From Zootoca vivipara (taxonomy: Eukaryota): a DNA stretch of 64,000 nt. The notes beneath the pieces were generated by a model. The model was not told where the DNA came from and searched no databases. It was given only the letters and a program-made list of their open reading frames with translations. Within the stretch, counting starts at the first letter, position 1; each line of letters begins with the position of its first letter. Below are positions 51,449-63,729 of this stretch, piece after piece. The position numbers and the translations under genes are program-made. Where the stretch lies: the NCBI RefSeq assembly GCF_963506605.1, contig NC_083277.1, positions 92,318,001 to 92,382,000 of the forward strand, given 5' to 3'.

Positions 51449-52664
51449 TCACATTTCACTCCTCCATTTCAGAATAATGTATGCTATAAACAACACTGAG
51501 AAAATCAGCCGAGCATAGAAAAACAGGCTCTCAGTAATGGCCACGATCCTGTTCCATTCTGCATTGGTAGACACTTGGCTCTTCTCGGGAAATAGCTCTT
51601 CCCTCATCTGTTTCACCTCTGAATAGATGCTTCTGAGGAAGATGTAAGCCTCTGCTTCTGCATCTTCTTTGCCTGCCAGGGCGCGGTCACAGGGCTCTTT
51701 CTGCTCATCTGAAATATAACATGTAGCAAATCCGTAGCTAAGTTGGAGCTCTATCACTGGAAGTCCTGGGCCAGAGGACTCAGCAACAGGTGGCAACTTA
51801 GGCCTTCATAAGGCTTCCCATGCTATTTGAAGCCCAAACACTACACAGGTCACATCCAGTGCCACATAGAATCAGCTGTGGAATATTTTACTGTGCACCA
51901 AACTTACTAAGTTTTGGGAGAAAGTGCTGGACTATATATAGTGTCTTGTTTATAAACGGGGGAAAATTAAGATTTTCAAAGGTGAATATGCTCTTAAACT
52001 ATAGACCCGTTGCATCAAAATTGACAACTGGACAGCAAAAATGGATTCTACAGTAAAAGCATAAGTTTCAAATACATATTGCCCATACCCTGTTTCTCAT
52101 ATTTTAAGACATACCCATAAAATAAGCCATAGCAGGATTTTTAAGCATTCAAGGAATATAAGCCATACCCCGAAAATAAGACATAGTGATAGGCACAGCA
52201 GCAATGCCGTCTGCAGCAGGAGGAGGAGGAAAAAAATAAGACATCCCTTGAAAATAAGTCATAGTGTGTTTTTTTGAGGAAAAAATAAATATAAGACGTG
52301 TCTTATAATATGAGAAACACGGTATTACATCGCCAACAAAGAGCTACATTAGATAGTCCTTTGTTATACAGTACAAACATAAGGGAGCCCAATAGATTTT
52401 AAATAGTATTTTCTGTTGTATAAGTCTTAGTTTAAGTTCCACTGATACATCTAACAGCATAGGCAACCTTGGCTCTCCAGATGTTTTGGAACTACAACTC
52501 CCATGATCCCTGACCACTGGCCCTGTTAGCTAGGGATCATGGGAGTTGTAGTCCCAAAACATCTGGAGAGCCAAGGTTGCCTATGCCTGGTCTAATACCA
52601 AAGCCATGGCATTTCCCCACTTTATTCCAATCATTTATTGAACTCTGCATATCAGACATATTTG

Positions 52665-52697
<33 letters not shown>

Positions 52698-55600
52698 CAA
52701 CTGTAAATCTGGCTCTTCCCCACCATTCAAACCTGGTTTGTGTATCAGTTGTAATAATGAGGGTTGCCCTGACCTTCCATCAGTCATTTTTAGAAGTTCT
52801 AAAATGAGTTTTTGTAAGGTTTTTTGCGCACTATAAACTCCTCTCTCTGAGCCCATTGAGCTTGGGCTGGGCTGGGACAAAAAGCACACTGCACTGAACC
52901 TGCATAGAATATGGTTCTAATGGGTTCCCTGTCGTTTGCAGAGTACCCTCAGGAGAGGGCAGTTTGTATCAGAAAGGGCCCCAAAGCTCCCCATATTAAT
53001 TTTAGCCTTTTACCGTAATTGTGCCTGTGAGAAGGGGGTTTATTGTTTTGTTTTTGTTTTAATTATTTACTTGTGTTTTTATCTTGTATTTTATTCTGTG
53101 AACCGCCCTGAGATCTTGCGATGAAGGGCAGTACCGTCATACCTCAGTTTAAGTATGCTTCGGTTTGAGTATTTTCAGTTTAAGTACTCCGCAGACCCGT
53201 CTGGAACGGATTAATCCACTTTCCATTACTTTCAATGGGAAAGTTCGCTTCAGGTTAAGTACGCTTCAGGTTAAGTATGGACCTCCGGAACCAATTACAG
53301 TCATACCTCGGGTTAAGTGCGCTTCAGGTTGAGTACTCCGTGGACCTGTCTGGAATGGATTAATCCACTTTCCATTACTTTCAATGGGAAAGTTCGCTTC
53401 AGGTTAAGTACGCTTCAAGCTAAGTACTCCATGGACCCGTCTGGAACGGATTACAGTAATACACTTTCCACTACTCTTTCAATGGGAAAGTTCGCTTCAG
53501 GTTAAGTACACTTCAAGTTAAGTACAGACTTCCGGAACCAATTGTGTACTTAAACCGAGGTACCACTGTATACAAAATTAATTAATTAATTAATTAATTA
53601 TTAATAATATTAAAAGTAATAACATTTTCAGGCTTCCTGTTTCTGGCGGTGAGAAATGGCTGACTCCCACACGATCGGACCTCAGCCGTGCCGGTAATTC
53701 AGGGTTGGTATGGGGGTAATTAGCTCTGGCAGACTCCCCAGGGTGGGGGAGGTCTGTCTCGTAGACCCGCAGACCGTCCGAGATTGTCAGCTTGCATCAA
53801 GGTGCAAGTGGCAAGATGCTAGGTCCCAGAGCACGACACGTCTGGCACTCTCCAAAGTCACTCTCATAGCCGGAAATATCTGTTTGATAAAATAATTAGA
53901 TTTGGACAATAAACAGACATAGTCTGGACCGAAGAAGACTGAGAAAAAACCTGCAGAACTGCATAGTCCCTGGTGTTTAAGCTCGGACTTCAAAGAGATT
54001 CTCATCATCTCATCTGCTGTTCACTATTATTCTCTCTCAACTTGTACAATTTTAAATGTGTGTGTGTAAAATGTTGTCAGCCTTTTGTGCTCGTAAATGC
54101 AAAGGAAACAGACCATTCAAAGGTGGATCTGAATGTTGGTGCCATGAAACCCTGACCTGCTGTGCAGCAATTTTTGGGTATGGGGCTATTCAATAAAAGT
54201 CATAAGTTCTTATGAATACTGACCAGGATAAGGAACGTATTTTTCAGATGTTTTCTTCTTTCTCCTAGAGGTAATGAGTCTCTCGCATTTGAGGAACCAA
54301 CGGGGAGGTTTCATCTCCTTCAGAGACCTTGTCACATAATTCTCAAGGAGGCTGACAACCATCAACAGGAAAACTCCCATGAAAAATTTTGCTGCGAAAT
54401 GAAAGGCACAGCAAATCTTGCTGTGAGATGGATCTCTCCTAGCGCTATCAAATAATTACTTTTCCATTATAAGCTGCAAGAAATTACTCTTGCTTACCTA
54501 TTATAGGGGGGTCATCTGAGGATGCTGGCAGAATACTATTGAGAATCAGCGACAAAAAAGAGACTTCTAGGATCAATGTGATCTTGACGTTGATCTTTTC
54601 AGAATCACTGGCAGAAGTGAAGGAAACAGCCATATCCAGGAAGAAGAGAACAGCGGTTGGGATGATTAGATTCAGCACATATAGAATAGGACGCCTCTGC
54701 ATAAAAATCTGTTGAGAGATTAAAAACGCATCAAACTGCTTGAAAACAACAACAACAAACGCAAGTGGGATTTGATTGCAACAAGGAGTCATCCCCTAAT
54801 TTTCGAAACTTGACAGCTAGGGGTCCATTGAACCGAAACAGGTGTGCCAGTGGGTCACTGAGGCTAGGAGCTCTTCCAACTTTCTCCTTCAGACAACCCT
54901 TTCTGCATTGACTTTTCTGTCAAGGATCTATTGTGCATTGCAGAAAATGCCGAGTCATGTTTAAGGTTGCGTGCTCAGCCACCCCTGCTCTGCCTGCACA
55001 AAGAACACCTCTGCATAACAACTCCCCTCTTCTTATTAAGGAACTCCAGATTATAAGCATCCAAGAAATCCCATGCTTTCTTAGAATAAAGGCCATTCCC
55101 TTCTCCAGACTGTGGTCCAGGAATCTGATGGGTAGTTTACTCACACCCTCCAACTTTCCTCAGATGAAAATAGGGTCATTTCTCATTCCCCCCCCAACTG
55201 ACCCTCCTCGATGCCCCATTTTGTGGTGTCCCCCAGCAGAGCATTTCCTATCAGAAGAAGGGCGAGCGCCACCACCACTACGCAAAAGGGACACGGCACA
55301 CAGACCCGCCACCCTGCTGAGAAAATTCTGTAATCCCAATTTTATTTTATTTTATTTCTTTTGGTAGATTTACCAAAAGAAAAACAGCAGTAAATAAATT
55401 TTAGAAAGGGGCATGGGTACAAAGCATTTTAAAAAATAATAATCAAGATTCCTTGTGTTCTGCTCTGCCTATCCAGAAGAGGGCAACCAAAATGGTCAAA
55501 GGCCTGGAAACGATGCCTTATGAGGAACGGCTTAGGGAGCTGGGTATGTTTAGCCTGGAGAAGAGAAGGTTAAGGGGTGATATGATAGCCATGTTCAAAT

Positions 55601-58600
55601 ATATAAAAGGATGTCATATAGAGGAGGGTGAAAGGTTGTTTTCTGCTGCTCCAGAGAAGCGGACACGGAGCAATGGATTCAAACTACAGTACTGTACATG
55701 AAAGAAGATTCCGCCTAAACATTAGGAAGAACTTCCTGACAGTAAGAGCTGTTCGGCCGTGGAATTTGCTGCCACGGAGTGTGGTGGAGTCTCCTCCTTT
55801 GGAGGTCTTTAAGCAGAGGCTTGACAGCCATCTGTCAGGAATGCTTTGATGGTGTTTTCTGCTTGGCAGGGGGTTGGACTGGATGGCCCTTGTGGTCTCC
55901 TCCAACTCTATGATTCTATGATTCTATCCTCCCACCCAGGGGAGCCCTGTCCTCTGCCTGCCCCTCACAGCTGATATTTCGTGGGGCTGAGCCCCAGTGG
56001 TGGCAGCCTCTTCTCCTCACCTGCTCTCCAGCAGCTGCTATGAGCTGCCCAAAGGAGGAGGCCAGCAGCAGCGGCCATAAAGAGGCAATGGGAAGCTTCT
56101 TCACAGCCACCACTGCCACCATCCTTGTCACTCGAACAAGCGCCGGCTCATTCTCCCCCTCCCCCAAGCCAAGCTCGGTGGTGGCAGCGCTGACAGGGGA
56201 ATTAGAGGCATTCCTGGATCAAATCAGAAGCTGGGTTGGCTGTTGTAATTCTGGGACCGCCTTTGGAAAATTGAAGGGTATTATTCTACTTAGCAACATG
56301 TCTCTTCCCTAGGATATAAAATGAAATCGGTAATACATACTGTAATTGGGGATCGTGAGTCCCAGAGGCAATCAGTATTCTGTTGCTGGGCTCTTATGCC
56401 ACACGTTGTGACCACCAGTGACTTAGCGGTATTTCCTGAAGAAGAATCCTCCGTAGCAACAACAAAATTTCATCGAAACAATGCAATCTGCAGAATGTTT
56501 CCTATTAAGCAATGGAAGTCAAAGCCCTGACGAGCACCTCATCAGTCTTCTATACCTGGTAAGTCACCGTACTGTAGTTCATCTCAAGACCAGTCATGGT
56601 GTCACGGGAAACACTGATGTGGTTGAACTTCCACTCCCCGTTAGTTAAGTATAGGTTGCGATCTTTGGCATCCAATTTAGTGGTAAACGTTTTGTGCAAC
56701 ATTTCCACTTCCTTATCTGGAGCGAGAGAAAAACAACAAAGAGACAGGAGCTTAAGATGGGATTCTATTTTCCTTGTAGCCTCCACATAACCTCCCCGCT
56801 CCACCATCCGAACAAAGGAGACCTAAACTCTTAAAATGCTTTGTGCGATATATAGTAATGATTCGGCAACGCTAACTCATACTCGCCAACTCTTCATATT
56901 TACCAGGGACAGTTCCTATTTTCTGGCATAGCTGCCAAGTTTTCCCTTTTCTCGCGAGGAAGCCTATTCAGCATAAGGGAATTTCCCTTAAAAAAAGGGA
57001 TAACTTGGCAGCTATGTTTTCTGGTACTATATGTGGTAAATTACATTTCCCTCTTTTTTTTGGCAGGAGATGCTGCAGGTGCCTAAAACACCCCAATGAC
57101 TTATATGCTTTCCTTGGTTGCTAACAGCAGACAGTGTGTGTGTGTGTGTGTGTGTGTTGTATAATGGAACTGCAATAAGAACAGGAAAAGCCATGCTGGT
57201 TGCTTAGTGCTGTCGCCTCACATCCTGGTTACAGGCTTCCCTTCAGCATCTGATTGGATGCTGTGGGAAACGGGATTCTGGGGCAGTTAGACCTTTGGCC
57301 TGACCAATCAGGACTCTCCTTATGCCCTTATGGGCTAAAACGTCCTCCTACCATGGCCACTTCCAGACTACTGTGGGTGGGATCAATTGCATACCAGCAG
57401 ATTAGGTACTACTATGCAGCAAAACGCCTCCGCTCAACCAACCATGGTGTGGTGTCTTACTCCCCCCCCCCTTTTTTCTTTTGCACCTGTCATCAAAACA
57501 GGTGAGTCGAGGGGGAGCAACATTTGTTTGGGAGGCTGTGCTGCTGGTGGCGCCCCCCCCCAATATTTTGTTCAAGTTGGCGCCAGTGTCAAACAGCAAG
57601 CGCACTCGAGAGAAAATGTGCTGTTTACGGCTTACCTGAATGCATGGGGGAGAGCACAGTTATGTTGCAAGCCTGCTTATCGAAAGGAAATGTGAAGATG
57701 TGCAGGCTGCAAGATGATGTCAGGTGAAAAGCCTGGTGCTGCATCATTTCTCCATTGGAGGAAACGTGAAGGAACGGGCTGGTTCTGGACTTCTCTTCAT
57801 TGGCCCTGAAACATTGCCATTAAGGCCCAAGAGCAGGGGTCAGCAAACTTTTTCAGCAGGGGTCCCTCAGACCTTGTGGGGGGCTGGACTATATTTTGAA
57901 AAAAAAATGTACAAATTCCTATGCCCCACAAATAACCCAGAGATGCATTTTAAATAAAAGGACACATTCTGCTCATGTAAAAACACCAGGCAGGCCCCAC
58001 AAATAACCCAGAGATGCATTTTAAATAAAAGGACACATTCTACTCATGTAAAAACATGCTGATTCCTGGACTGTCTGGGGGCCGGATTTAGAAGGCAATT
58101 GGGCCGCATTCGGCCCCCGGGCCTTAGTTTGAGGATCCCTGTCCAAGAGATTAAGCAACAGGCTTGGTATCACTTGTTTTAGTTCGGGTAACCCTTTTGC
58201 AGCTGAAGTTTGCTTTCCCTGCCCCTCGCCATCCCAATGTGCCTTGAATGATGGGTCAGGGGAGCCGCAGGCAACACTGGCCTCCGTCCCTCTTTCCTTC
58301 CCTCCCTCCTCTGATGCCCTCTCGCGCCTCTGCCTCCCAAAGGCTTGCACACCTGTTTTTCTTGCAGCAGCCCTGGCTACAAGCTCCCCAGGCGAGTGGT
58401 GCCTCTTTGGGGTGGGGTGGGGCAGCTCAGAGACCAGCTGCCTGGAGGACTTCCAAGGGGAGGGGAGGCTGAGGGAACACTCTACAAGGAAGGGTGTTCA
58501 AAAAAAGGTGAGAGGCCGCCAGCTCTGCAGGCAAGGGGTGACGTAACTACAGAGGTGCTGCAAAAAGAACGTAGTTGGTTAAGGGAGCTGTGGACTCAAA

Positions 58601-60905
58601 AAGGTTGAAAATCTCCGATATAATGTACAGTCATACCTCAGGTTGTGAACGTGATCCGTGCGGGAGGCACGCTCATAACCCGCAGTGCTGCATCTGCTCA
58701 CACACGCGTGTGATGCGATTCAGCACTTCTGTGCATGCGCATGATGTCATTTTGTGTTTCTGCGCATGCACGAGTGCTGAAACCCAGAATTAACCCATTC
58801 CCGTACTTCTGGGTTCAACACGGTCCACAACCCGGAAACGCGCAACCCGCAGCGTTCGCAACTCGAGGTATGACTGTATTTTAATGTTTTCAAATGTGTT
58901 GCAAGTCACTTGGAGACCTTTGTTGGGTAACTAGTAACTAACAAGTCTAATTAACTGTCATCATTGCTACCACCAATATAGCCATTTGTTTACTCTCTAG
59001 CATGAATTTTAAATTTTCTACCTTCATTTAACTATTTGTGGGTGTTTCAACCAAAGCTTAAACCATCATATCATCTGCAAACAACACTTATTTGGTATTC
59101 AGAAGGTTGGAGCTGCCATAGCTTTTTTGAGAGGGAAGGGGAGAAATCAACATAAGCATTGCTTCAAAGAAGTTGCCAAACAAATAAATGATCCTTACTG
59201 TTCTTCTATAGAGATTTCAGGCATCCAGAATTTATCCGCTGGGAGAGTGAGATGGGTTATGCCACAGAAGTCAGAGGGATTCCAGGACACAAAGTCATTT
59301 CTCCATTTCTATGTTGCAGAGTTGAGTGAGCAAAAAGATTAGTGTACAACATCTCAGTTTGCTTATTTAGGAGAATTGATAAAATCTCTGAGCAGTGGAC
59401 ATAAAACAATGACTATTAATAACAGCCAGAGAAGATCAGCATTAAAAAAACTCCAACAAACTTTATTCCTGACACTTCTCTATCTTCTCTTACCCTCCTT
59501 GTCAACACTTCCAGTATCAGAATGAACAAAACTGGTGACAATGGACATCCTTGTCTTGTTCCTTTTTGGATATCACATTTGCCCATTATCATCCGATTTA
59601 CAATTATTGTGCTTGCTGTCACATTGAAATACTGACTTCTCACAAATGTGGAACAAACATGATATAGCATTTGTAACTCTGCAAGTTCTGCAGATCAAAG
59701 TGATCAAACAGGTATGTATGGGTCAAGGTGCTCTCTCAAGTAAACGGCTTCCAAATTCTTAATGACTTTATATACTAAGAGTAAAATACTGAATTTGGCG
59801 CACTCGGCAATTCAGCGGCTACTGCAGATCTTGAAGCAGAAGAATAATGTGCTCCAGGATTTCACTCCTGTTAGCAATCACGCTGCACCGTTTTGCACTA
59901 ACTGCAGTTTCCAGACCAGCCATAAGAGGAGTCCCACAAAGAGTGAATTGCAGTCATTCAGTTGTGAAGTTATCATTGTCTGGGCTGCTATGGGTCAAGC
60001 TATCCCGGTCCAGGATTGGCAACAGCTGCTGTTACCAGCTGAAGTTGGCAAAAGGAAGCCAGCTACAAAATTCATCTGGGCCTCCAGCAACAATATTGGA
60101 TCCAGGAGCCACCCTAAGATTGCTCCTCCAGAAGGAGTGTGACCCTTTCCAGGTCAGGCAACTGGCCCATTTCTTGGAAATGGGAAGCACTCACCCCCAG
60201 TTCCTTTTCCTTACTAAGATTCAAGCTCAGCTGGACAAACCAAGGGCTAGTACAATATGATAATAAAAAAAGGAGAGCCTTACCACAAACAGCCAGAAGT
60301 AAGTTGTAATCACTTGCAACTTCTCTACCTGTAAAGAAACAAAAACAGAAGGGGCACAAACCACCCACAGCGATGCACCTGCTGAAATGGACGAGCTTAA
60401 CTCTTTAACTGGAAATCAGTGGAACATAAAAATGCTTTGCTTTGCCTGGATCACCCCCAAATTATAAAATTCCCTCTGCCTCGCTTGTCTGAAGTGTGAA
60501 GCTCGCCGGAGATTTTGGCGTCTTACCACTGCCAGGATAGAGACGAGAGTAAAATCCAACTTGACTGTCAAAGGTTCTCTCCAGTCCTCCTTGGGTCTGG
60601 TATACAGGAGGAGCTTGTTGTCGTTCGAAATATTCAGATATTCAACCACACTGTGATGTGAACAGTTCCATGGGAAGGCAATCCCTACTGGAAATGGAGT
60701 GAAAAGAAGTTTTATTATTATTAATCACCACTCAAGCCAGGAACAGCCTTTCCCACTGACTGCCTATTACGGATGGCAACATATGAGAGCAAAATCTCTG
60801 TTCCTAATTCAGACACTAACCCATCCCTTGGACCATCATCATAGCAAAGAGAGGCTTACCTGGGAACAGAGCAAAAAGGGCACAACAGAAAAACGACTTC
60901 CACAT
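51449..60905 (-). CDS. 5-HT3-receptor-like Cys-loop (pentameric ligand-gated) channel subunit, ~442 aa, orphan paralog
   Basis: Nine exons: 60905-60860 (signal peptide), 60684-60527 ([12 protein letters not shown]), 60328-60284, 59308-59199 (WMPEISIEE), 57805-57636 (Cys loop [15 protein letters not shown]), 56716-56556 (GEW), 54708-54498 (RRP-M1, M2), 54391-54224 (M3) and 51708-51449 (MA, M4). Internal exon sizes 45/110/170/161/211 match the HTR3A gene structure as I recall it, and the frame is open throughout (1329 nt). Confidence 0.92.
52088..52322. mobile_element. Tc1/mariner (Tc2/pogo-like) MITE with CCG-type ends
   Basis: TA|CCCTGTTTCTCATAT ... ATATGAGAAACACGG|TA with AAATAAG subterminal repeats. 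Confidence 0.8.
52455..52589. mobile_element. hAT MITE
   Basis: Same family as 44799-44934. Confidence 0.85.
53134..53568. mobile_element. Tigger-like MITE with three internal units
   Basis: Same family as 18731-19051 in opposite orientation, TA TSD, with an internal TIR-like copy at ~53298. Confidence 0.85.
55472..55927 (+). mobile_element. CR1 LINE 3' fragment, same young subfamily as 6289-6757
   Basis: Near-identical to the 6.3-kb copy, with (ATTCTATG)n tail. Confidence 0.95.
56927..57015. mobile_element. Short hAT MITE; second copy at ~62560-62648
   Basis: TIRs CATAGCTGCCAAGTT/AACTTGGCAGCTATG. 8-bp TSDs TTTTCTGG (here) and GCAGGGGC (second copy). Confidence 0.85.
57834..58141. mobile_element. 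hAT MITE with internal tandem duplication
   Basis: CAGGGGTCAGCAAAC...GTTTGAGGATCCCTG, TSD CCCAAGAG/TCCAAGAG. Confidence 0.85.
58628..58876. mobile_element. Tigger-like MITE
   Basis: TA|CAGTCATACCTC ... GAGGTATGACTG|TA. Confidence 0.8.
59030..59625 (-). mobile_element. L1/Tx1 reverse-transcriptase remnants, two pieces flanking a host exon
   Basis: [21 protein letters not shown]...GIK at ~59625-59462 and EYQISV-FADDMMV at ~59100-59030. Confidence 0.7.
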
Positions 60906-63529
60906 TCTTCTTCTGCACCTGAGAGATGGCAACAGACTGAGGAGGCTGTGCAAGGAGCCGACTGAGGAGGCATCAATGAATTTTAAACCTTTGCAGGGAT
61001 GAAGTGCACACTGTAAACTTTGGTCAAAGTCTCGCACGAAAGCCCTCTTGGGAGCGAGCTTCTTTGAAATTATTAATACTTTATTTCCTGTAAACAGGAA
61101 GAGCACTTTTCTCACACCAAGGTAGCCACTCTGAGCGGCTCCCAACAGAATATTAATAACACGATAAAACATCAAACATTTAAAACTTCCCTGAAGTATT
61201 TTTTTTTATGAGGGCCATTGCTTAGGGAACCAAAACTATGCCACCCATGCCCAAGAGGAAGGCACCAGCAGACTTGGAGGGATACCACAAGTTTTGCAGC
61301 AGTACAGAAAAGAGCCCAGTGAGGACTGAGTGTGTTCAGTGAGCACAGAACACTGGATGTAATACTGGGGGAAACAGAGTATTTCCAGTTCTGAAGAGCA
61401 GCATTTCACAGGGCAATGTAGGCTGTTGGTCCCACTTGTTTTCCATTATTGAGGCAGTCCCCAACATCCTATTTTTTTGAGCATTCACCCTGATCTATTT
61501 TCTGGGAGGTTAGACAACGATGGCTGTTTATTGAGCGTTTATTCTGATCTGTTGGCACGGAAGGTAGATGACGTCGTGTCAAAGTGACCTCTATCCCATA
61601 CTTTCCAGTGTGTTTCCGTGTTCCCTATCCTTATTGCAAAAAGTCTGGCCTTTTGGAGAGGGGGGTCTGTTGTACAAGACCATCTAATCCAATCTAAAGC
61701 TCTGCCTCCATGGTTGGAGGCAGTTGTTGGCCTCCATCTGTCTCGAGAGGCAATGGAGTGCACATTTGTGGGTGAAGTAAAACCACTTGAGAATCACAGT
61801 GCCTGCTGTGGCCGCAGAGACAGGTAACTCATAACTGCTGCTTCCTGTGTTGTTTTTTTACTGCGTTACCAGCACCGAAGTGGCCTCCCTGGGCGCAAAC
61901 CTGGGCAGTGTGTATGGGAGTCCTGAGCTGCCCAGACAACAAGACCCCCCTCTCAGCCTCGCTGATGTGCTCCAAAGGAAAGCAGAGCAATATGTTTGGC
62001 ACCAGTTTGGCTGCAGGAGTTGCTGGAAGGAGGTTTACAAGGCACCATCCAACCGCCTTAGGGACTTCACTCCAGATTTGTGTAGGGTTTGCTCTTTAGC
62101 CTTCTCCCAAAGATAGTCCCTCAAGGCAGTGAGTACAGATTTTTCCTCGAGGTTTACTTTCAAAGCCTTTCTCTCGAATGAGCAAAGCAGTGGAGGTTGG
62201 GGGTCAGAGTTTTCTTACTCCTAGATGGGCTGCCTTCCCAGGTTGATGAGCCCCATCTGCCTCTCACTTCCCCCCTACAGCGCATGCAGAAACCGCCTTC
62301 TTGACCAATGGAACCACTCTTGGTCTTGTCTGCTCAACTCACCAGTGTCTGTCTTCACATGCAGGGGAAGTCCTTAACTCACCAATGGGTTTGAGAGCCA
62401 TTGGCTACCCTCACGTGGTTTAGCCAACCAGTTGAAGCCATTTCTGGGGTGTCACATGCTGACAGCTTCTAGGAGCCACAGGTGAGAGCTGAGTTCAGGG
62501 TGGTGACCAAGGTGGCCGAACTACCCCAGAAGGCACGCAACATGTCCCCCAGCAGGGGCCATAGCTGCCAAGTTTTCCCTTTTCTTGCGAGGGAGCCTAT
62601 TCAGCATAATGTAAAATCCCTTAAAAAAGGGATAACTTGGCAGCTATGGCAGGGGCACTACCCCTCCCCTAACACCATATACACCCCGGAGGCTTTAATG
62701 TTTCTGATTACCAGTTGTTTGAAACCACAGGAGGGGAGAGTGCTCTGTCTTGTGCTCAGATTGTACTTGCAGGTTTTCTACAGGCACCTGGCTGGCCCCT
62801 GTGACAACAGAATGCTAACAGATGGGCCATTGGCCTGATCTTTTGGGATCTTACTGTGTTCTTAAGTGCACGACCTGAATTTCCCTATATGTGATTGACC
62901 CCCACTGGAGACAGGGCAACAGTCTGGAAGCACCCTAAGTCCTTTGTCCTCATTCTCAACCCAGAGTTTCATTTCAGGGAAAGAAGAGTGATCTGTAAGG
63001 CGAGCAGCTTCCGCCCTTTCTGCTCCACCTATTTTTATTGGTTCACTTTCCAATAAAACTAAACTTGGGGGGGGGGTAAGATTAGGTAAAAGCCAACAAC
63101 TGAAGGCAGTGGCAAGGACCCATCTCCTTAATGGAAACTTGAAGATCTCTTCTGATGCTGCGGTTATTGAGACACAACTGCACATTTCATATGAATATTG
63201 AAAATGGATCCCTGGGGCTTTCTGGGTGGCAGATAATGGAGAAAAAGGAACATTGCCAAAATGCTGTACTGGATAGATGTCTGTGATGGGTTACTTAATC
63301 TTAATTGCTTCAAAGCAGTGGCCTCAATTTGAAGGAATCAGAGAAGTTCCTTTGTATGGTTACATCCTGTTCAATTGCATGGAATTTGCAAGCTGCTTCT
63401 TTGCCTTTTCCAGTGGTATTCTCATACCCTACTCACCAGACGCACCAACTGCAGGGGGCTGAGGGGTCTTTGGCCTCCTCAGTATCTGGGGGCAAGGGGC
63501 CAGGCCCCTGAATGTTGAGTGGGTGGAAG

Positions 63530-63729
63530 CAGTGGCGGAACTTCGTGCTCCGGCACCAGGGGCGGAGAGCAGGCGGGGGCGTGGCACGTTGCCCTCAGGG
63601 GCATGGCGCGCATCCCAGGGGCATGGCACGCATCCCGGGGGCATGACGCCCAGCACGTGGGGGCAGCCATGATGCCACCCCACCGGGATCCTGGTGCCGG
63701 GAGCGGTACCCCCTCTTCCTCTGCCAGTG
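63530..63729. mobile_element. hAT (Tip100-like) GC-rich MITE
   Basis: CAGTGGCGGA...TCTGCCAGTG termini, exact 8-bp TSD GGTGGAAG (63522-63529 and 63730-63737), internal GGGGCATG repeats. Confidence 0.8.

What the first reader, a model, noticed from the sequence alone, without database searches (positions are those of the whole stretch)
51449..60905. Intact orphan 5-HT3-like Cys-loop channel with a rebuilt ligand pocket, at a locus where I know no human counterpart
Seen: a complete 9-exon ORF with signal peptide, Cys loop and M1-M4. Established: in 5-HT3A serotonin binds via loop B Trp (TFTSWLHT, cation-pi), loop D Trp/Arg (YIWYRQ), loop A Glu and loop C aromatics. Here loop B reads TVLSPMHS (Trp to Pro) and loop D reads YFWLFV (Arg to Phe), while loop A Glu (WMPEISIEE) and a loop C Tyr (MNYS) are kept. 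Two extra extracellular Cys (WNCSHH, DFCGI) could form an added disulfide. Inference: a conserved but probably non-serotonergic channel or accessory subunit of unknown ligand, absent from the human ATP5PD-tRNA-Arg neighbourhood as far as I recall.
Basis: partly seen in the sequence, partly recalled or inferred. Interest (0 to 1): 0.8.

Follow-up and report, generated by a model that had tools for sequence, protein, structure and literature searches.

The report
Lizard 5-HT3-like channel subunit gene
This is a real, intact gene of the common lizard for a subunit of the serotonin-gated 5-HT3 channel family; it belongs to an old, unstudied branch found from fishes to birds but not retrieved from mammals, has lost the key serotonin-binding tryptophan, and is already predicted in public annotation, where it appears to be misnamed "5-HT3A".

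Summary
A nine-exon, 443-codon minus-strand gene lies at 51449-60905 with canonical splice sites. Exons 2-9 are 100% identical to RefSeq XP_034954966.2 of Zootoca vivipara, so the gene is already annotated, as "5-hydroxytryptamine receptor 3A". That name does not fit. In a rooted tree the protein falls in a separate vertebrate-wide branch (ray-finned fishes, amphibians, turtles, birds, crocodile, squamates). Grouping it with 3A+3B is rejected (AU p=5e-13). No mammalian member appeared in three searches.

It is not an orphan. It is the divergent squamate paralog (X1) of a tandem cluster that this scan already reported just beyond the window, on neighbouring DNA. The "extra" cysteine pair is a trait of the whole branch. 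Loop-B Trp183 is Pro in all seven X1 sequences, while the pore keeps its cation-channel residues.

Amino-acid differences from Podarcis avoid the membrane core (p=0.005), which indicates purifying selection. Three RNA runs gave no reads on any exon.

The most likely role is a non-agonist-binding subunit of a heteromeric 5-HT3-type cation channel; this is inferred, not shown. I could not test the relation to mammalian HTR3C/D/E or ZACN, dN/dS, or synteny outside the window.

The parts
60860..60905 (-).
   Evidence: One search shows the sequence, a GTAAGC donor, and an upstream acceptor TCTCTCAG|GTGCAG. It is homologous to the N-termini of P0003 and P0159. The RefSeq model does not use it.
63437..63644 (-). 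Alternative first coding exon used by RefSeq XP_034954966.2; Pro/Ala/Arg-rich, no signal peptide, in a GC-rich stretch; probably 5'UTR read as coding
   Evidence: Searches give an exact peptide match to P0321 residues 1-69 and a GTGAGT donor in phase 1.
60527..60687 (-). Exon 2: N-terminal helix with the first branch-specific Cys (codon 60664-60662); two N-glycosylation sequons
   Evidence: (100% to P0321).
60284..60328 (-). Exon 3 (45 nt): loop D, YFWLFV. Trp90 is kept (60295-60293); Arg92 is Phe (60289-60287)
59199..59308 (-). Exon 4: second branch-specific Cys (DFCGI, codon 59266-59264); loop [10 protein letters not shown] with the Glu129 equivalent (59203-59201)
   Evidence: (Neur_chan_LBD 27.4 bits).
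57636..57805 (-). Exon 5: loop E, Cys loop (57711-57667) and loop B TVLSPMHS (57660-57637). The Pro codon replacing Trp183 is at 57648-57646
   Evidence: 38.7 bits; 5-HT3A 1e-7, next family 0.011.
56556..56716 (-). Exon 6: loops F and C; the Tyr234 equivalent is in MNYS (56576-56574)
   Evidence: (HMMER alignment).
54498..54708 (-). Exon 7: M1 and M2. M2 spans 54600-54535, with -1' Glu, 0' Lys, 6' Thr, 9' Leu, 10' Glu and 20' Ser
54224..54391 (-). Exon 8: M3 and the start of the short intracellular loop. The junction codon gives Ala (PPIIAKFFMG)
   Evidence: The same junction is seen in P0003.
51449..51708 (-). Exon 9: MA helix (only one of 5-HT3A's three conductance-limiting Arg is kept), M4, TGA stop. 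ATTAAA lies 25 nt downstream

Best explanation
Shown: this is the Zootoca vivipara gene for a pentameric ligand-gated channel subunit of the 5-HT3 family. It belongs to an ancient branch, here called clade X, found in ray-finned fishes, amphibians and sauropsids. Clade X is distinct from the HTR3A/HTR3B branch and from the fish/amphibian '3C/3E-like' branch. Within clade X the gene is the divergent squamate paralog X1, next to X2-type paralogs.

Inferred mechanism: the protein is made with the exon-1 signal peptide and folds as a normal Cys-loop subunit. An extra disulfide may tie the N-terminal helix to the beta2-beta3 loop. The subunit then contributes to a cation-permeable pore (-1' Glu, 6' Thr, 9' Leu). 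Its principal (+) face cannot bind an amine agonist in the classical way, because the loop-B cation-pi Trp183 is Pro. Its complementary (-) face is better kept: Trp90 is present and hydrophobic or aromatic residues sit at positions 92 and 141.

It therefore most likely works as a non-agonist-binding, modulatory subunit. In that role it would co-assemble with an agonist-binding 5-HT3A-type subunit, as 5-HT3B-E do in mammals, and change gating or conductance. Two of the three MA-helix arginines that limit 5-HT3A conductance are replaced.
For: Identity:
- Exon 5 matches 5-HT3A at 1e-7, against 0.011 for the next family.
- The full-length RefSeq twin P0153 matches 5-HT3A at 1.4e-56, against 1.6e-36 for alpha7.
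- In the rooted tree, clade X has 98/96 support and X1 has 100/100.
- X1 held together with 3A+3B is rejected, p=5e-13. Tetrapod X held with the 3C/E-like group is rejected, p=3e-4.

- 'LSPMH' is invariant in 7 of 7 X1 sequences from lacertids, a cordylid, a skink and iguanians.
- Across clade X position 183 is highly variable (W, Y, F, I, V, T, S, A, E, L, P).
- Trp90 is kept in fishes, most amphibians, the crocodile and those squamates whose models cover the site, and Glu129 is kept in nearly all sequences. This fits a subunit that supplies a complementary face only.

Constraint:
- Of 22 amino-acid differences from Podarcis raffonei, only 1 falls in the 126 residues of exons 7-8 (binomial p=0.0047).
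- Hemicordylus, a distantly related lizard, also has a full-length intact model, and a skink and iguanians have partial ones.

Literature (PMC3504740):
- Trp183 makes the cation-pi contact with 5-HT.
- The -1' Glu sets cation selectivity.
- B-E subunits form no functional homomers but work together with A.
Against: - There is no expression evidence. Three RNA-seq runs of this species, about 6% of each read and tissue unknown, gave zero depth on exons 3-8.
- No assembly or electrophysiology data exist for any clade-X member (searches found no paper).
- RefSeq's model lacks the signal-peptide exon. If that is the real transcript, the protein could not enter the membrane correctly.
- Models in Lacerta agilis, Podarcis lilfordi and P. 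muralis cover only the 3' half, and the P. muralis one is flagged low quality.
- Glu129, Trp90 and Tyr234 are retained, so some ligand binding is not excluded.
- Rao et al. list 'No subunit A ortholog identified' for Zootoca. This is probably an annotation gap, since P. muralis and L. agilis have one.
- The tandem X2 neighbours offer other partners.
Confidence: 0.5

Rival explanations
1. Clade-X subunits form their own receptor, either as an X1 homomer or as X1 with the neighbouring X2 paralogs. The receptor would be gated by something other than serotonin: another small molecule, a metal ion or protons. That would make it a separate vertebrate signalling or chemosensory channel that mammals lost.
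For: - The branch has been kept apart from 3A/3B and from the 3C/E-like group since before the split of ray-finned fishes and tetrapods.
- Several paralogs lie in tandem in the lizard.
- X1's new loop-B state (Pro) is invariant in all seven X1 sequences compared, which suggests a constrained new function rather than decay.
- Glu129, Trp90 and Tyr234 are kept.
Against: - No squamate clade-X paralog keeps an aromatic residue at position 183, so no interface would have the classical aromatic box.
- Position 183 varies freely across the branch, unlike an agonist-binding residue.
- Mammalian non-A 5-HT3 subunits with similar losses do not form functional homomers (PMC3504740).
- There is no expression evidence.
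Confidence: 0.25
2. The gene is silent or on its way to being lost in lacertids. The reading frame is still open, but transcripts are absent or start at the upstream exon and skip the signal peptide, so no working channel subunit is made.
For: - Depth is zero on all exons covered in three RNA runs.
- RefSeq models in Zootoca and P. raffonei lack a signal peptide.
- Models in three other lacertids are partial, and the P. muralis one has a frameshift in the M4 part.
- Two Zootoca annotation releases differ by two residues in exon 2.
Against: - The 443-codon frame is open, and all 16 splice sites are canonical.
- Hemicordylus, a distant lizard family, also has a full-length intact model.
- Differences from Podarcis avoid the membrane core (p=0.0047).
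- An intact read-assembly fragment (P0324) carries the P. muralis-type substitutions, so that frameshift may be an assembly error.
- Only about 6% of three libraries of unknown tissue was read.
Confidence: 0.12
3. Clade X is the non-mammalian counterpart (co-ortholog) of the mammalian HTR3C/D/E genes, moved to another chromosome. The gene would then have human relatives after all.
For: - Clade X and the '3C/3E-like' group both carry the N-terminal Cys and the beta2-beta3 Cys that 3A lacks.
- Some clade-X members are named '3C-like' or '3E-like' by NCBI.
- No mammalian 3C/D/E sequence could be fetched, so the tree does not test this directly.
Against: - A separate fish, lungfish and amphibian group sits closer to 3A/3B (98/94). 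NCBI names many of its members 3C- or 3E-like, and from my recollection of human 5-HT3C (not a tool result) it shares that protein's N-terminal motifs. That group is the more likely 3C/D/E counterpart.
- Holding tetrapod clade X together with that group is rejected (p=3e-4).
- The locus (KCTD2-ATP5PD-tRNA-Arg) is not the HTR3C/D/E neighbourhood, from my own knowledge of human 3q27.
Confidence: 0.07
4. The gene is the lizard's HTR3A, as RefSeq names it, or the ortholog of ZACN, which in human lies on the same chromosome arm as ATP5PD.
For: - The RefSeq name is '5-hydroxytryptamine receptor 3A [Zootoca vivipara]'.
- Rao et al. found no other A subunit in Zootoca.
- ZACN and ATP5PD both lie on human 17q25 (my own knowledge).
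Against: - The AU test rejects grouping with 3A+3B (p=5e-13).
- Identity to mammalian 3A is only 27-28%.
- The defining 3A binding residues are lost.
- Other lacertids have a separately annotated 5-HT3A.
- Against ZACN: the match to 5-HT3A (1.4e-56) is far stronger than to any other solved family, and no ZAC chain is among the best 60. Whether a ZAC chain is in that copy of the PDB was not established.
Confidence: 0.02

Closest known systems
5-HT3B-E subunits (mammalian non-A subunits of the 5-HT3 receptor)
   Same: Both are 5-HT3-family subunits that lack key agonist-binding residues of the A subunit. By analogy X1 would be unable to act alone and would modulate an A-containing pentamer. As in 5-HT3B, the MA-helix arginines are partly replaced (PMC3504740).
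   Different: X1 is a different, older branch. It is present in fishes, amphibians and sauropsids and was not retrieved from mammals. Its locus is different (KCTD2-ATP5PD-tRNA-Arg). It has Pro at position 183 and Glu at M2 10'. Co-assembly with an A subunit is untested.
5-HT3A (HTR3A), the serotonin-binding subunit; solved structures such as 4PIR, 6HIN, 8BLB
   Same: - It is the best solved match (1.4e-56).
- Both have a Cys loop with FPFD, four membrane helices and an MA helix.
- -1' Glu, 6' Thr and 9' Leu are shared.
- Trp90, Glu129 and Tyr234 are kept.
   Different: - Identity is 27-28%.
- Substitutions are Trp183 to Pro, Arg92 to Phe, Phe226 to Met, Tyr143 to His and Tyr153 to His.
- X1 has an extra Cys pair.
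- Its intracellular loop is short.
- It falls in a separate clade.
Squamate X2 paralogs and the wider clade X ('5-HT3A-like' predictions in turtles, birds, crocodile, frogs, caecilians, sturgeon, teleosts such as si:dkey-49c17.4-like)
   Same: They belong to the same branch and share the Cys pair, the NDxLPxSSD-type M2-M3 motif and the loss or variability of Trp183. In the lizard they lie in the same tandem cluster.
   Different: X1 is 44-49% identical to X2 and to the crocodile protein. It sits on a long stem (0.42) and has its own fixed loop-B motif LSPMH. It was found only in non-gekkotan lizards among the sequences retrieved.
Zinc-activated channel (ZACN)
   Same: Both are Cys-loop cation channel genes outside the classical transmitter families. 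From my own knowledge, ZACN lies on the human chromosome arm that also carries ATP5PD.
   Different: X1 is clearly a 5-HT3-family member by sequence. No ZAC sequence was on hand for a direct comparison.

Membership tests
Cys-loop (pentameric ligand-gated) channel superfamily | Extracellular ligand-binding domain (Pfam Neur_chan_LBD) | tested here: met
   Exons 4 and 5 alone score 27.4 and 38.7 bits against a cut-off of 26.
Cys-loop (pentameric ligand-gated) channel superfamily | Signature disulfide loop, C-x13-C with FPFD | tested here: met
   [15 protein letters not shown] lies at 57711-57667.
Cys-loop (pentameric ligand-gated) channel superfamily | Four membrane helices M1-M4 | tested here: met
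   Hydrophobic windows: two in exon 7, one in exon 8, one in exon 9. Exon 7 alone scores only 20 bits for Neur_chan_memb (cut-off 28.1). The full-length twin P0153 carries PF02932.
5-HT3 receptor subunit family | Closer to 5-HT3 subunits than to nicotinic or other Cys-loop receptors | tested here: met
   5-HT3A scores 1.4e-56 against 1.6e-36 for alpha7. Exon 5 alone scores 1e-7 against 0.011. The protein falls inside the 5-HT3 group relative to two nicotinic-like outgroups, with 100/98 support.
5-HT3 receptor subunit family | Cation-selective pore (-1' Glu, polar 6', Leu 9') | tested here: met
   M2 is [22 protein letters not shown]. The role of -1' Glu is taken from PMC3504740. This is sequence only; no current was measured.
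HTR3A orthologs (serotonin-binding A subunit) | Groups with 3A in a tree | tested here: not met
   It falls in a separate clade. The AU test gives p=5e-13.
HTR3A orthologs (serotonin-binding A subunit) | Agonist-binding residues Trp183, Arg92, Phe226, Tyr143, Tyr153 as well as Trp90, Glu129, Tyr234 | tested here: not met
   Residues here are Pro183, Phe92, Met226, His143 and His153. Only Trp90, Glu129 and Tyr234 are kept.
HTR3B orthologs | Groups with 3B in a tree | tested here: not met
   The only 3B-type sequence on hand, the C-terminal part of the fused model P0006, groups with 3A at 100/99, far from X1. This rests on one partial 3B sequence.
HTR3C/D/E orthologs | Groups with mammalian 3C/D/E in a tree | tested here: inconclusive
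   No mammalian 3C/D/E sequence could be retrieved (one search lists only the best 120). The fish/amphibian group that NCBI names 3C/3E-like is separate from clade X.
ZACN orthologs | Closest to ZAC rather than to 5-HT3 subunits | tested here: inconclusive
   No ZAC chain is among the best 60 solved matches, while 5-HT3A dominates them. No ZAC sequence was available for a tree.
Clade X (unnamed 5-HT3-like branch of non-mammalian vertebrates) | Monophyly with fish, amphibian and sauropsid '3A-like' predictions, plus the paired N-terminal and beta2-beta3 cysteines | tested here: met
   Support is 98/96. The Cys pair is present in 41 of 41 complete rows and absent from 3A.

The most novel reading that the evidence does not exclude
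Clade-X subunits, here X1 together with its tandem X2 neighbours, assemble without any 5-HT3A subunit into a cation channel gated by a non-serotonin signal. That would be a fourth, mammal-lost class of 5-HT3-like receptors with its own physiology in fishes, amphibians, reptiles and birds.
Probability: 0.2. Interest if true: 0.8.

Novelty: new member of a known kind. Interest (0 to 1): 0.42.

Why it matters
The 5-HT3 receptor literature is built on the mammalian A-E subunits. If the tree here holds, most other vertebrates, including zebrafish and chicken relatives, carry a further ancient lineage of 5-HT3-like subunits. I found no paper on that lineage, and automatic annotation hides it under names such as "3A-like", or here plain "3A". 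That has three consequences:
- Comparative pharmacology of 5-HT3 receptors in non-mammals may need to account for these subunits.
- Gene naming is affected. The Zootoca RefSeq name appears to be wrong.
- It raises the question of what mammals lost.

The gene itself is an ordinary family member, and its loss of the agonist tryptophan resembles what B-E subunits show.

Tried and rejected
- **RNA evidence.** One read-laying run on 54330-60329 with three raw RNA runs gave only intronic repeat reads and no exon depth or splice joints.
- **Synteny and ortholog DNA.** I therefore have no ortholog DNA, no dN/dS and no synteny outside the window.
- **Mammalian 3B-E sequences.** The profile search returned 1292 hits but listed only the best 120, none of them mammalian 3B-E. 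A motif scan of all fetched proteins found only 3B-type fragments and no 3C/E.
- **ESM Atlas.** Both look-ups were uninformative beyond 'Cys-loop / 5-HT3 family'.
- **Literature.** Searches for si:dkey-49c17.4, for '3A-like' in lizards and for mammalian loss found nothing on this branch.
- **ZACN ortholog.** I considered this because ZACN and ATP5PD share a human chromosome arm. I set it aside because of the 5-HT3A match.
- **HTR3A ortholog, as RefSeq names it.** Rejected by the tree and the AU test.
- **Joined protein.** I neither built nor submitted a joined (spliced) protein of the window. Searches were done exon by exon by reference. For full-length work I used the tool-returned RefSeq proteins P0321 and P0153 as stand-ins.
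- **Structure prediction.** Not run, because the tool returns no coordinates and so could not test the disulfide.
Full report
**What is there.**
The window carries a nine-exon gene on the minus strand. Reading the sequence around each open stretch gives these exons:
- 60905-60860
- 60687-60527
- 60328-60284
- 59308-59199
- 57805-57636
- 56716-56556
- 54708-54498
- 54391-54224
- 51708-51449

Every intron starts with GT and ends with AG, and the phases fit. The total is 1332 nt, which is 443 codons plus TGA. All quoted motifs are present. Exons 4 and 5 alone pass Pfam's threshold for the neurotransmitter-gated channel ligand-binding domain. Exon 5 (Cys loop and loop B) matches solved 5-HT3A chains at 1e-7, while the next family scores 0.011. 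Exon 7 (M1-M2) matches alpha7 nicotinic, ACR-23 and 5-HT3A about equally.

**Whose gene it is.**
An exhaustive search with exon 5 found full-length lizard proteins. Per-exon comparison led to P0153 of Podarcis raffonei, at 89-100% identity. The members of its cluster include P0321, which is XP_034954966.2, "5-hydroxytryptamine receptor 3A [Zootoca vivipara]". P0321 is 100% identical to exons 2-9, including every split codon. The window is therefore common-lizard DNA, and the gene is already predicted in RefSeq.

RefSeq begins the protein differently. Its first coding exon lies at 63644-63437 in a GC-rich stretch. That exon encodes a Pro/Ala/Arg-rich peptide with no hydrophobic segment and splices straight to exon 2. 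This aligns with the signal peptides of the Hemicordylus ortholog and of the paralogs, and the exon has its own upstream acceptor site. No RNA read decides the matter.

**Neighbourhood.**
- KCTD2 exon 1 lies at 38633-39007 on the minus strand.
- ATP5PD exons lie at 42726-42911 and 46432-46596 on the plus strand.
- tRNA-Arg(TCG) lies at 50324-50399.
- Earlier notes of this scan report two more intact 5-HT3-like genes starting 3.7 kb beyond the window's end.
- A fused gene model from Phrynocephalus joins a clade member to an RF-1 domain. I read this as MRPL58 lying on the far side of the cluster in that lizard.

The gene is thus one member of a tandem cluster, not an isolated orphan. I could not look at mammalian genomes.

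**Family placement.**
For full-length work I used P0321 and P0153, which a tool returned and which equal or nearly equal the window's exons. P0153 matches solved 5-HT3A at 1.4e-56 and alpha7 at 1.6e-36.

A bootstrapped tree rooted on two nicotinic-like sequences shows two main groups:
- **3A plus a 3B-type fragment, with a fish/lungfish/amphibian group.** NCBI often names members of that second group 3C- or 3E-like. Support is 98/94.
- **Clade X.** It holds sturgeon, bowfin, teleosts, frogs, caecilians, birds, turtles, a crocodile and squamates. Support is 98/96.

Squamates carry two subclades, X1 and X2, each with 100/100 support. X1 contains the window gene, Podarcis, Hemicordylus and Lerista. 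In a first tree each window exon, entered as its own row, fell beside P0153.

Two constrained topologies are rejected:
- X1 together with 3A+3B (delta lnL 206, AU p=5e-13).
- Tetrapod clade X together with the 3C/E-like group (p=3e-4).

Identity to the window protein falls from 93% (Podarcis) and 68% (Hemicordylus), to 44-49% (X2, crocodile), 33-41% (other clade X), 33% (3C/E-like) and 27-28% (mammalian 3A).

Lacertids also have separately annotated 5-HT3A and 5-HT3B genes according to Table S1 of Rao et al. 2023. That table notes "No subunit A ortholog identified" for Zootoca. This may be why the annotation pipeline later gave this gene the bare name "3A". On my evidence the name is wrong.

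**Mammals.**
Three searches returned no mammalian member of clade X:
- A word-index search with the Hemicordylus ortholog gave 56 hits reaching down to teleosts at 31% identity.
- The exhaustive exon-5 search gave 14 hits nearest to tetrapod clade X. The named ones are squamates and the rest are unnamed read-assembly fragments.
- A search with the Ascaphus member, which is equally far from sauropsids and from any mammalian ortholog, gave frogs, birds, a crocodile and many teleosts.

This is good but not complete evidence of absence.

I could not fetch mammalian 3B-E or ZAC sequences. The relation of clade X to mammalian 3C/D/E is therefore inferred, not tested. My recollection of human 5-HT3C fits the 3C/E-like group, not clade X.

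**Binding site and pore.**
In an alignment anchored on mammalian 3A numbering, the window protein has:
- Trp90 kept
- Arg92 to Phe
- Asn128 to Glu
- Glu129 kept
- Phe130 to Gln
- Tyr141 to Phe
- Tyr143 to His
- Tyr153 to His
- Trp183 to Pro
- Phe226 to Met
- Tyr234 kept
- Glu236 to Thr

According to Lummis 2012 (PMC3504740), Trp183 makes the cation-pi contact with serotonin's amine, Glu129 hydrogen-bonds its hydroxyl, and Trp90 and Tyr234 are part of the aromatic box.

The context changes their meaning in three ways:
- Position 183 is variable across all of clade X. It is Trp only in caecilians, Tyr or Phe in frogs, birds and many turtles, Ser or Thr in X2, and many residues in fishes.
- Trp90 is kept in fishes, most amphibians, the crocodile and those squamates whose models cover the site, and Glu129 is kept in nearly all sequences. 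This pattern suits a subunit that offers a complementary face but not a principal, agonist-binding face.
- The motif LSPMH is invariant in all seven X1 sequences, from lacertids, a cordylid, a skink and iguanians. It is a fixed state, not decay.

The two "extra" cysteines are present in 41 of 41 complete clade-X sequences. They are matched, one column off, in the 3C/E-like group and are absent from 3A. In related receptors the N-terminal helix and the beta2-beta3 loop lie against each other. A disulfide is therefore plausible, but it is inferred.

M2 reads [22 protein letters not shown], with -1' Glu, 0' Lys, 6' Thr, 9' Leu, an unusual 10' Glu, and Ser at 20'. Of the three MA-helix arginines of 3A, only the first is kept.

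**Is it maintained?**
Two indirect arguments remain:
- Zootoca and Podarcis raffonei differ at 22 of 427 aligned residues. Only one difference lies in the 126 residues of exons 7-8 and none lies in M4. The binomial p is 0.0047, which is not what a neutrally drifting sequence would give.
- Hemicordylus, a distantly related lizard, also has a full-length intact model, and a skink and iguanians have partial ones.

Four observations weigh against maintenance:
- Three RNA-seq runs of this species, about 6% of each read and tissue unknown, put no read on exons 3-8. All reads lay on intronic repeats.
- Models in Lacerta agilis, P. lilfordi and P. muralis hold only the 3' half.
- The P. muralis model is flagged low quality and slips frame in the M4 part. 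An intact read-assembly fragment carries the same muralis-type substitutions.
- Two Zootoca annotation releases differ at two residues of exon 2.

**Reading.**
The identity is firm. The gene encodes a 5-HT3-family subunit of an ancient non-mammalian branch, is already annotated, and appears to be misnamed.

The mechanism is inferred:
- **Most likely (about one in two).** It is a non-agonist-binding subunit that joins an agonist-binding 5-HT3A-type subunit in a cation channel and modifies it, as B-E do in mammals.
- **A receptor made only of clade-X subunits with another ligand (about one in four).** This is the most interesting alternative.
- **A silent or decaying gene in lacertids (about one in eight).**
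- **Co-orthology with mammalian C/D/E.** This is unlikely but untested.
- **HTR3A orthology.** Rejected.
- **ZACN orthology.** Very unlikely.

**Novelty.**
I found no paper on this branch. The one broad survey, Rao et al. 2023, builds a separate tree for each subunit from database names and does not separate the branch. The scan itself has already met the branch on the neighbouring DNA (s1-850074). My independent searches agree with that note on its distribution and add that the window gene is the divergent third paralog, X1. I rate it a new member of a known kind, of moderate interest.

Noticed in passing
window 63437-63644 (-): This is the first coding exon of RefSeq XP_034954966.2. It is GC-rich and encodes a Pro/Ala/Arg-rich peptide without a signal sequence. 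It splices to exon 2 and skips the signal-peptide exon at 60905-60860. If exon 1 were included after it, the upstream frame would hit TAG at the start of exon 2, so the stretch would act as 5'UTR or a uORF.
   Followed up: partly
window 51449-60905 (annotation): RefSeq names this gene '5-hydroxytryptamine receptor 3A' in Zootoca, whereas its orthologs in other lizards are named '3A-like'. The tree and AU test place it far from 3A. Rao et al. 2023 Table S1 lists no A subunit for Zootoca.
   Followed up: yes
window 55330-55930, 56925-57017, 57847-58130: Intronic repeats collect hundreds of RNA reads from elsewhere in the genome, many with loose ends. The first stretch carries a LINE/CR1-like open frame at 55453-55849.
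   Followed up: no
window 50324-50399 (+): tRNA-Arg (anticodon TCG) lies about 1 kb downstream of the channel gene's stop, between it and ATP5PD.
   Followed up: no
window 38633-39007 (-), 42726-42911 and 46432-46596 (+): KCTD2 exon 1 (BTB domain start) and two ATP5PD exons lie head to head, as expected for this conserved gene pair.
   Followed up: partly
exon 2, window 60527-60687: The older Zootoca protein version XP_034954966.1 differs from the window at two residues of exon 2 (Pro/Thr and Glu/Lys). The older version carries the Podarcis states. This is either within-species variation or a difference between assemblies.
   Followed up: no
orthologs of exon 9 (P0322, P0324): The Podarcis muralis model XP_028576841.1 is a 'LOW QUALITY PROTEIN' that runs into the +1 frame inside the M4 part. 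An unnamed read-assembly fragment with the same muralis-type substitutions is intact.
   Followed up: partly
tree: The crocodile clade-X protein groups with squamate X1/X2 (100/99) and not with birds and turtles. This is either an old sauropsid duplication with differential loss or a long-branch effect.
   Followed up: no
P0076 (unnamed read-assembly fragment, 158 aa): Its loop B reads HSPMHS, like the X1 motif, but it is only 30% identical to X1. Its origin is unknown.
   Followed up: no
window 57130-57200: A (GT)n-type microsatellite lies in intron 5. It reads as HTHTHT in translation.
   Followed up: no
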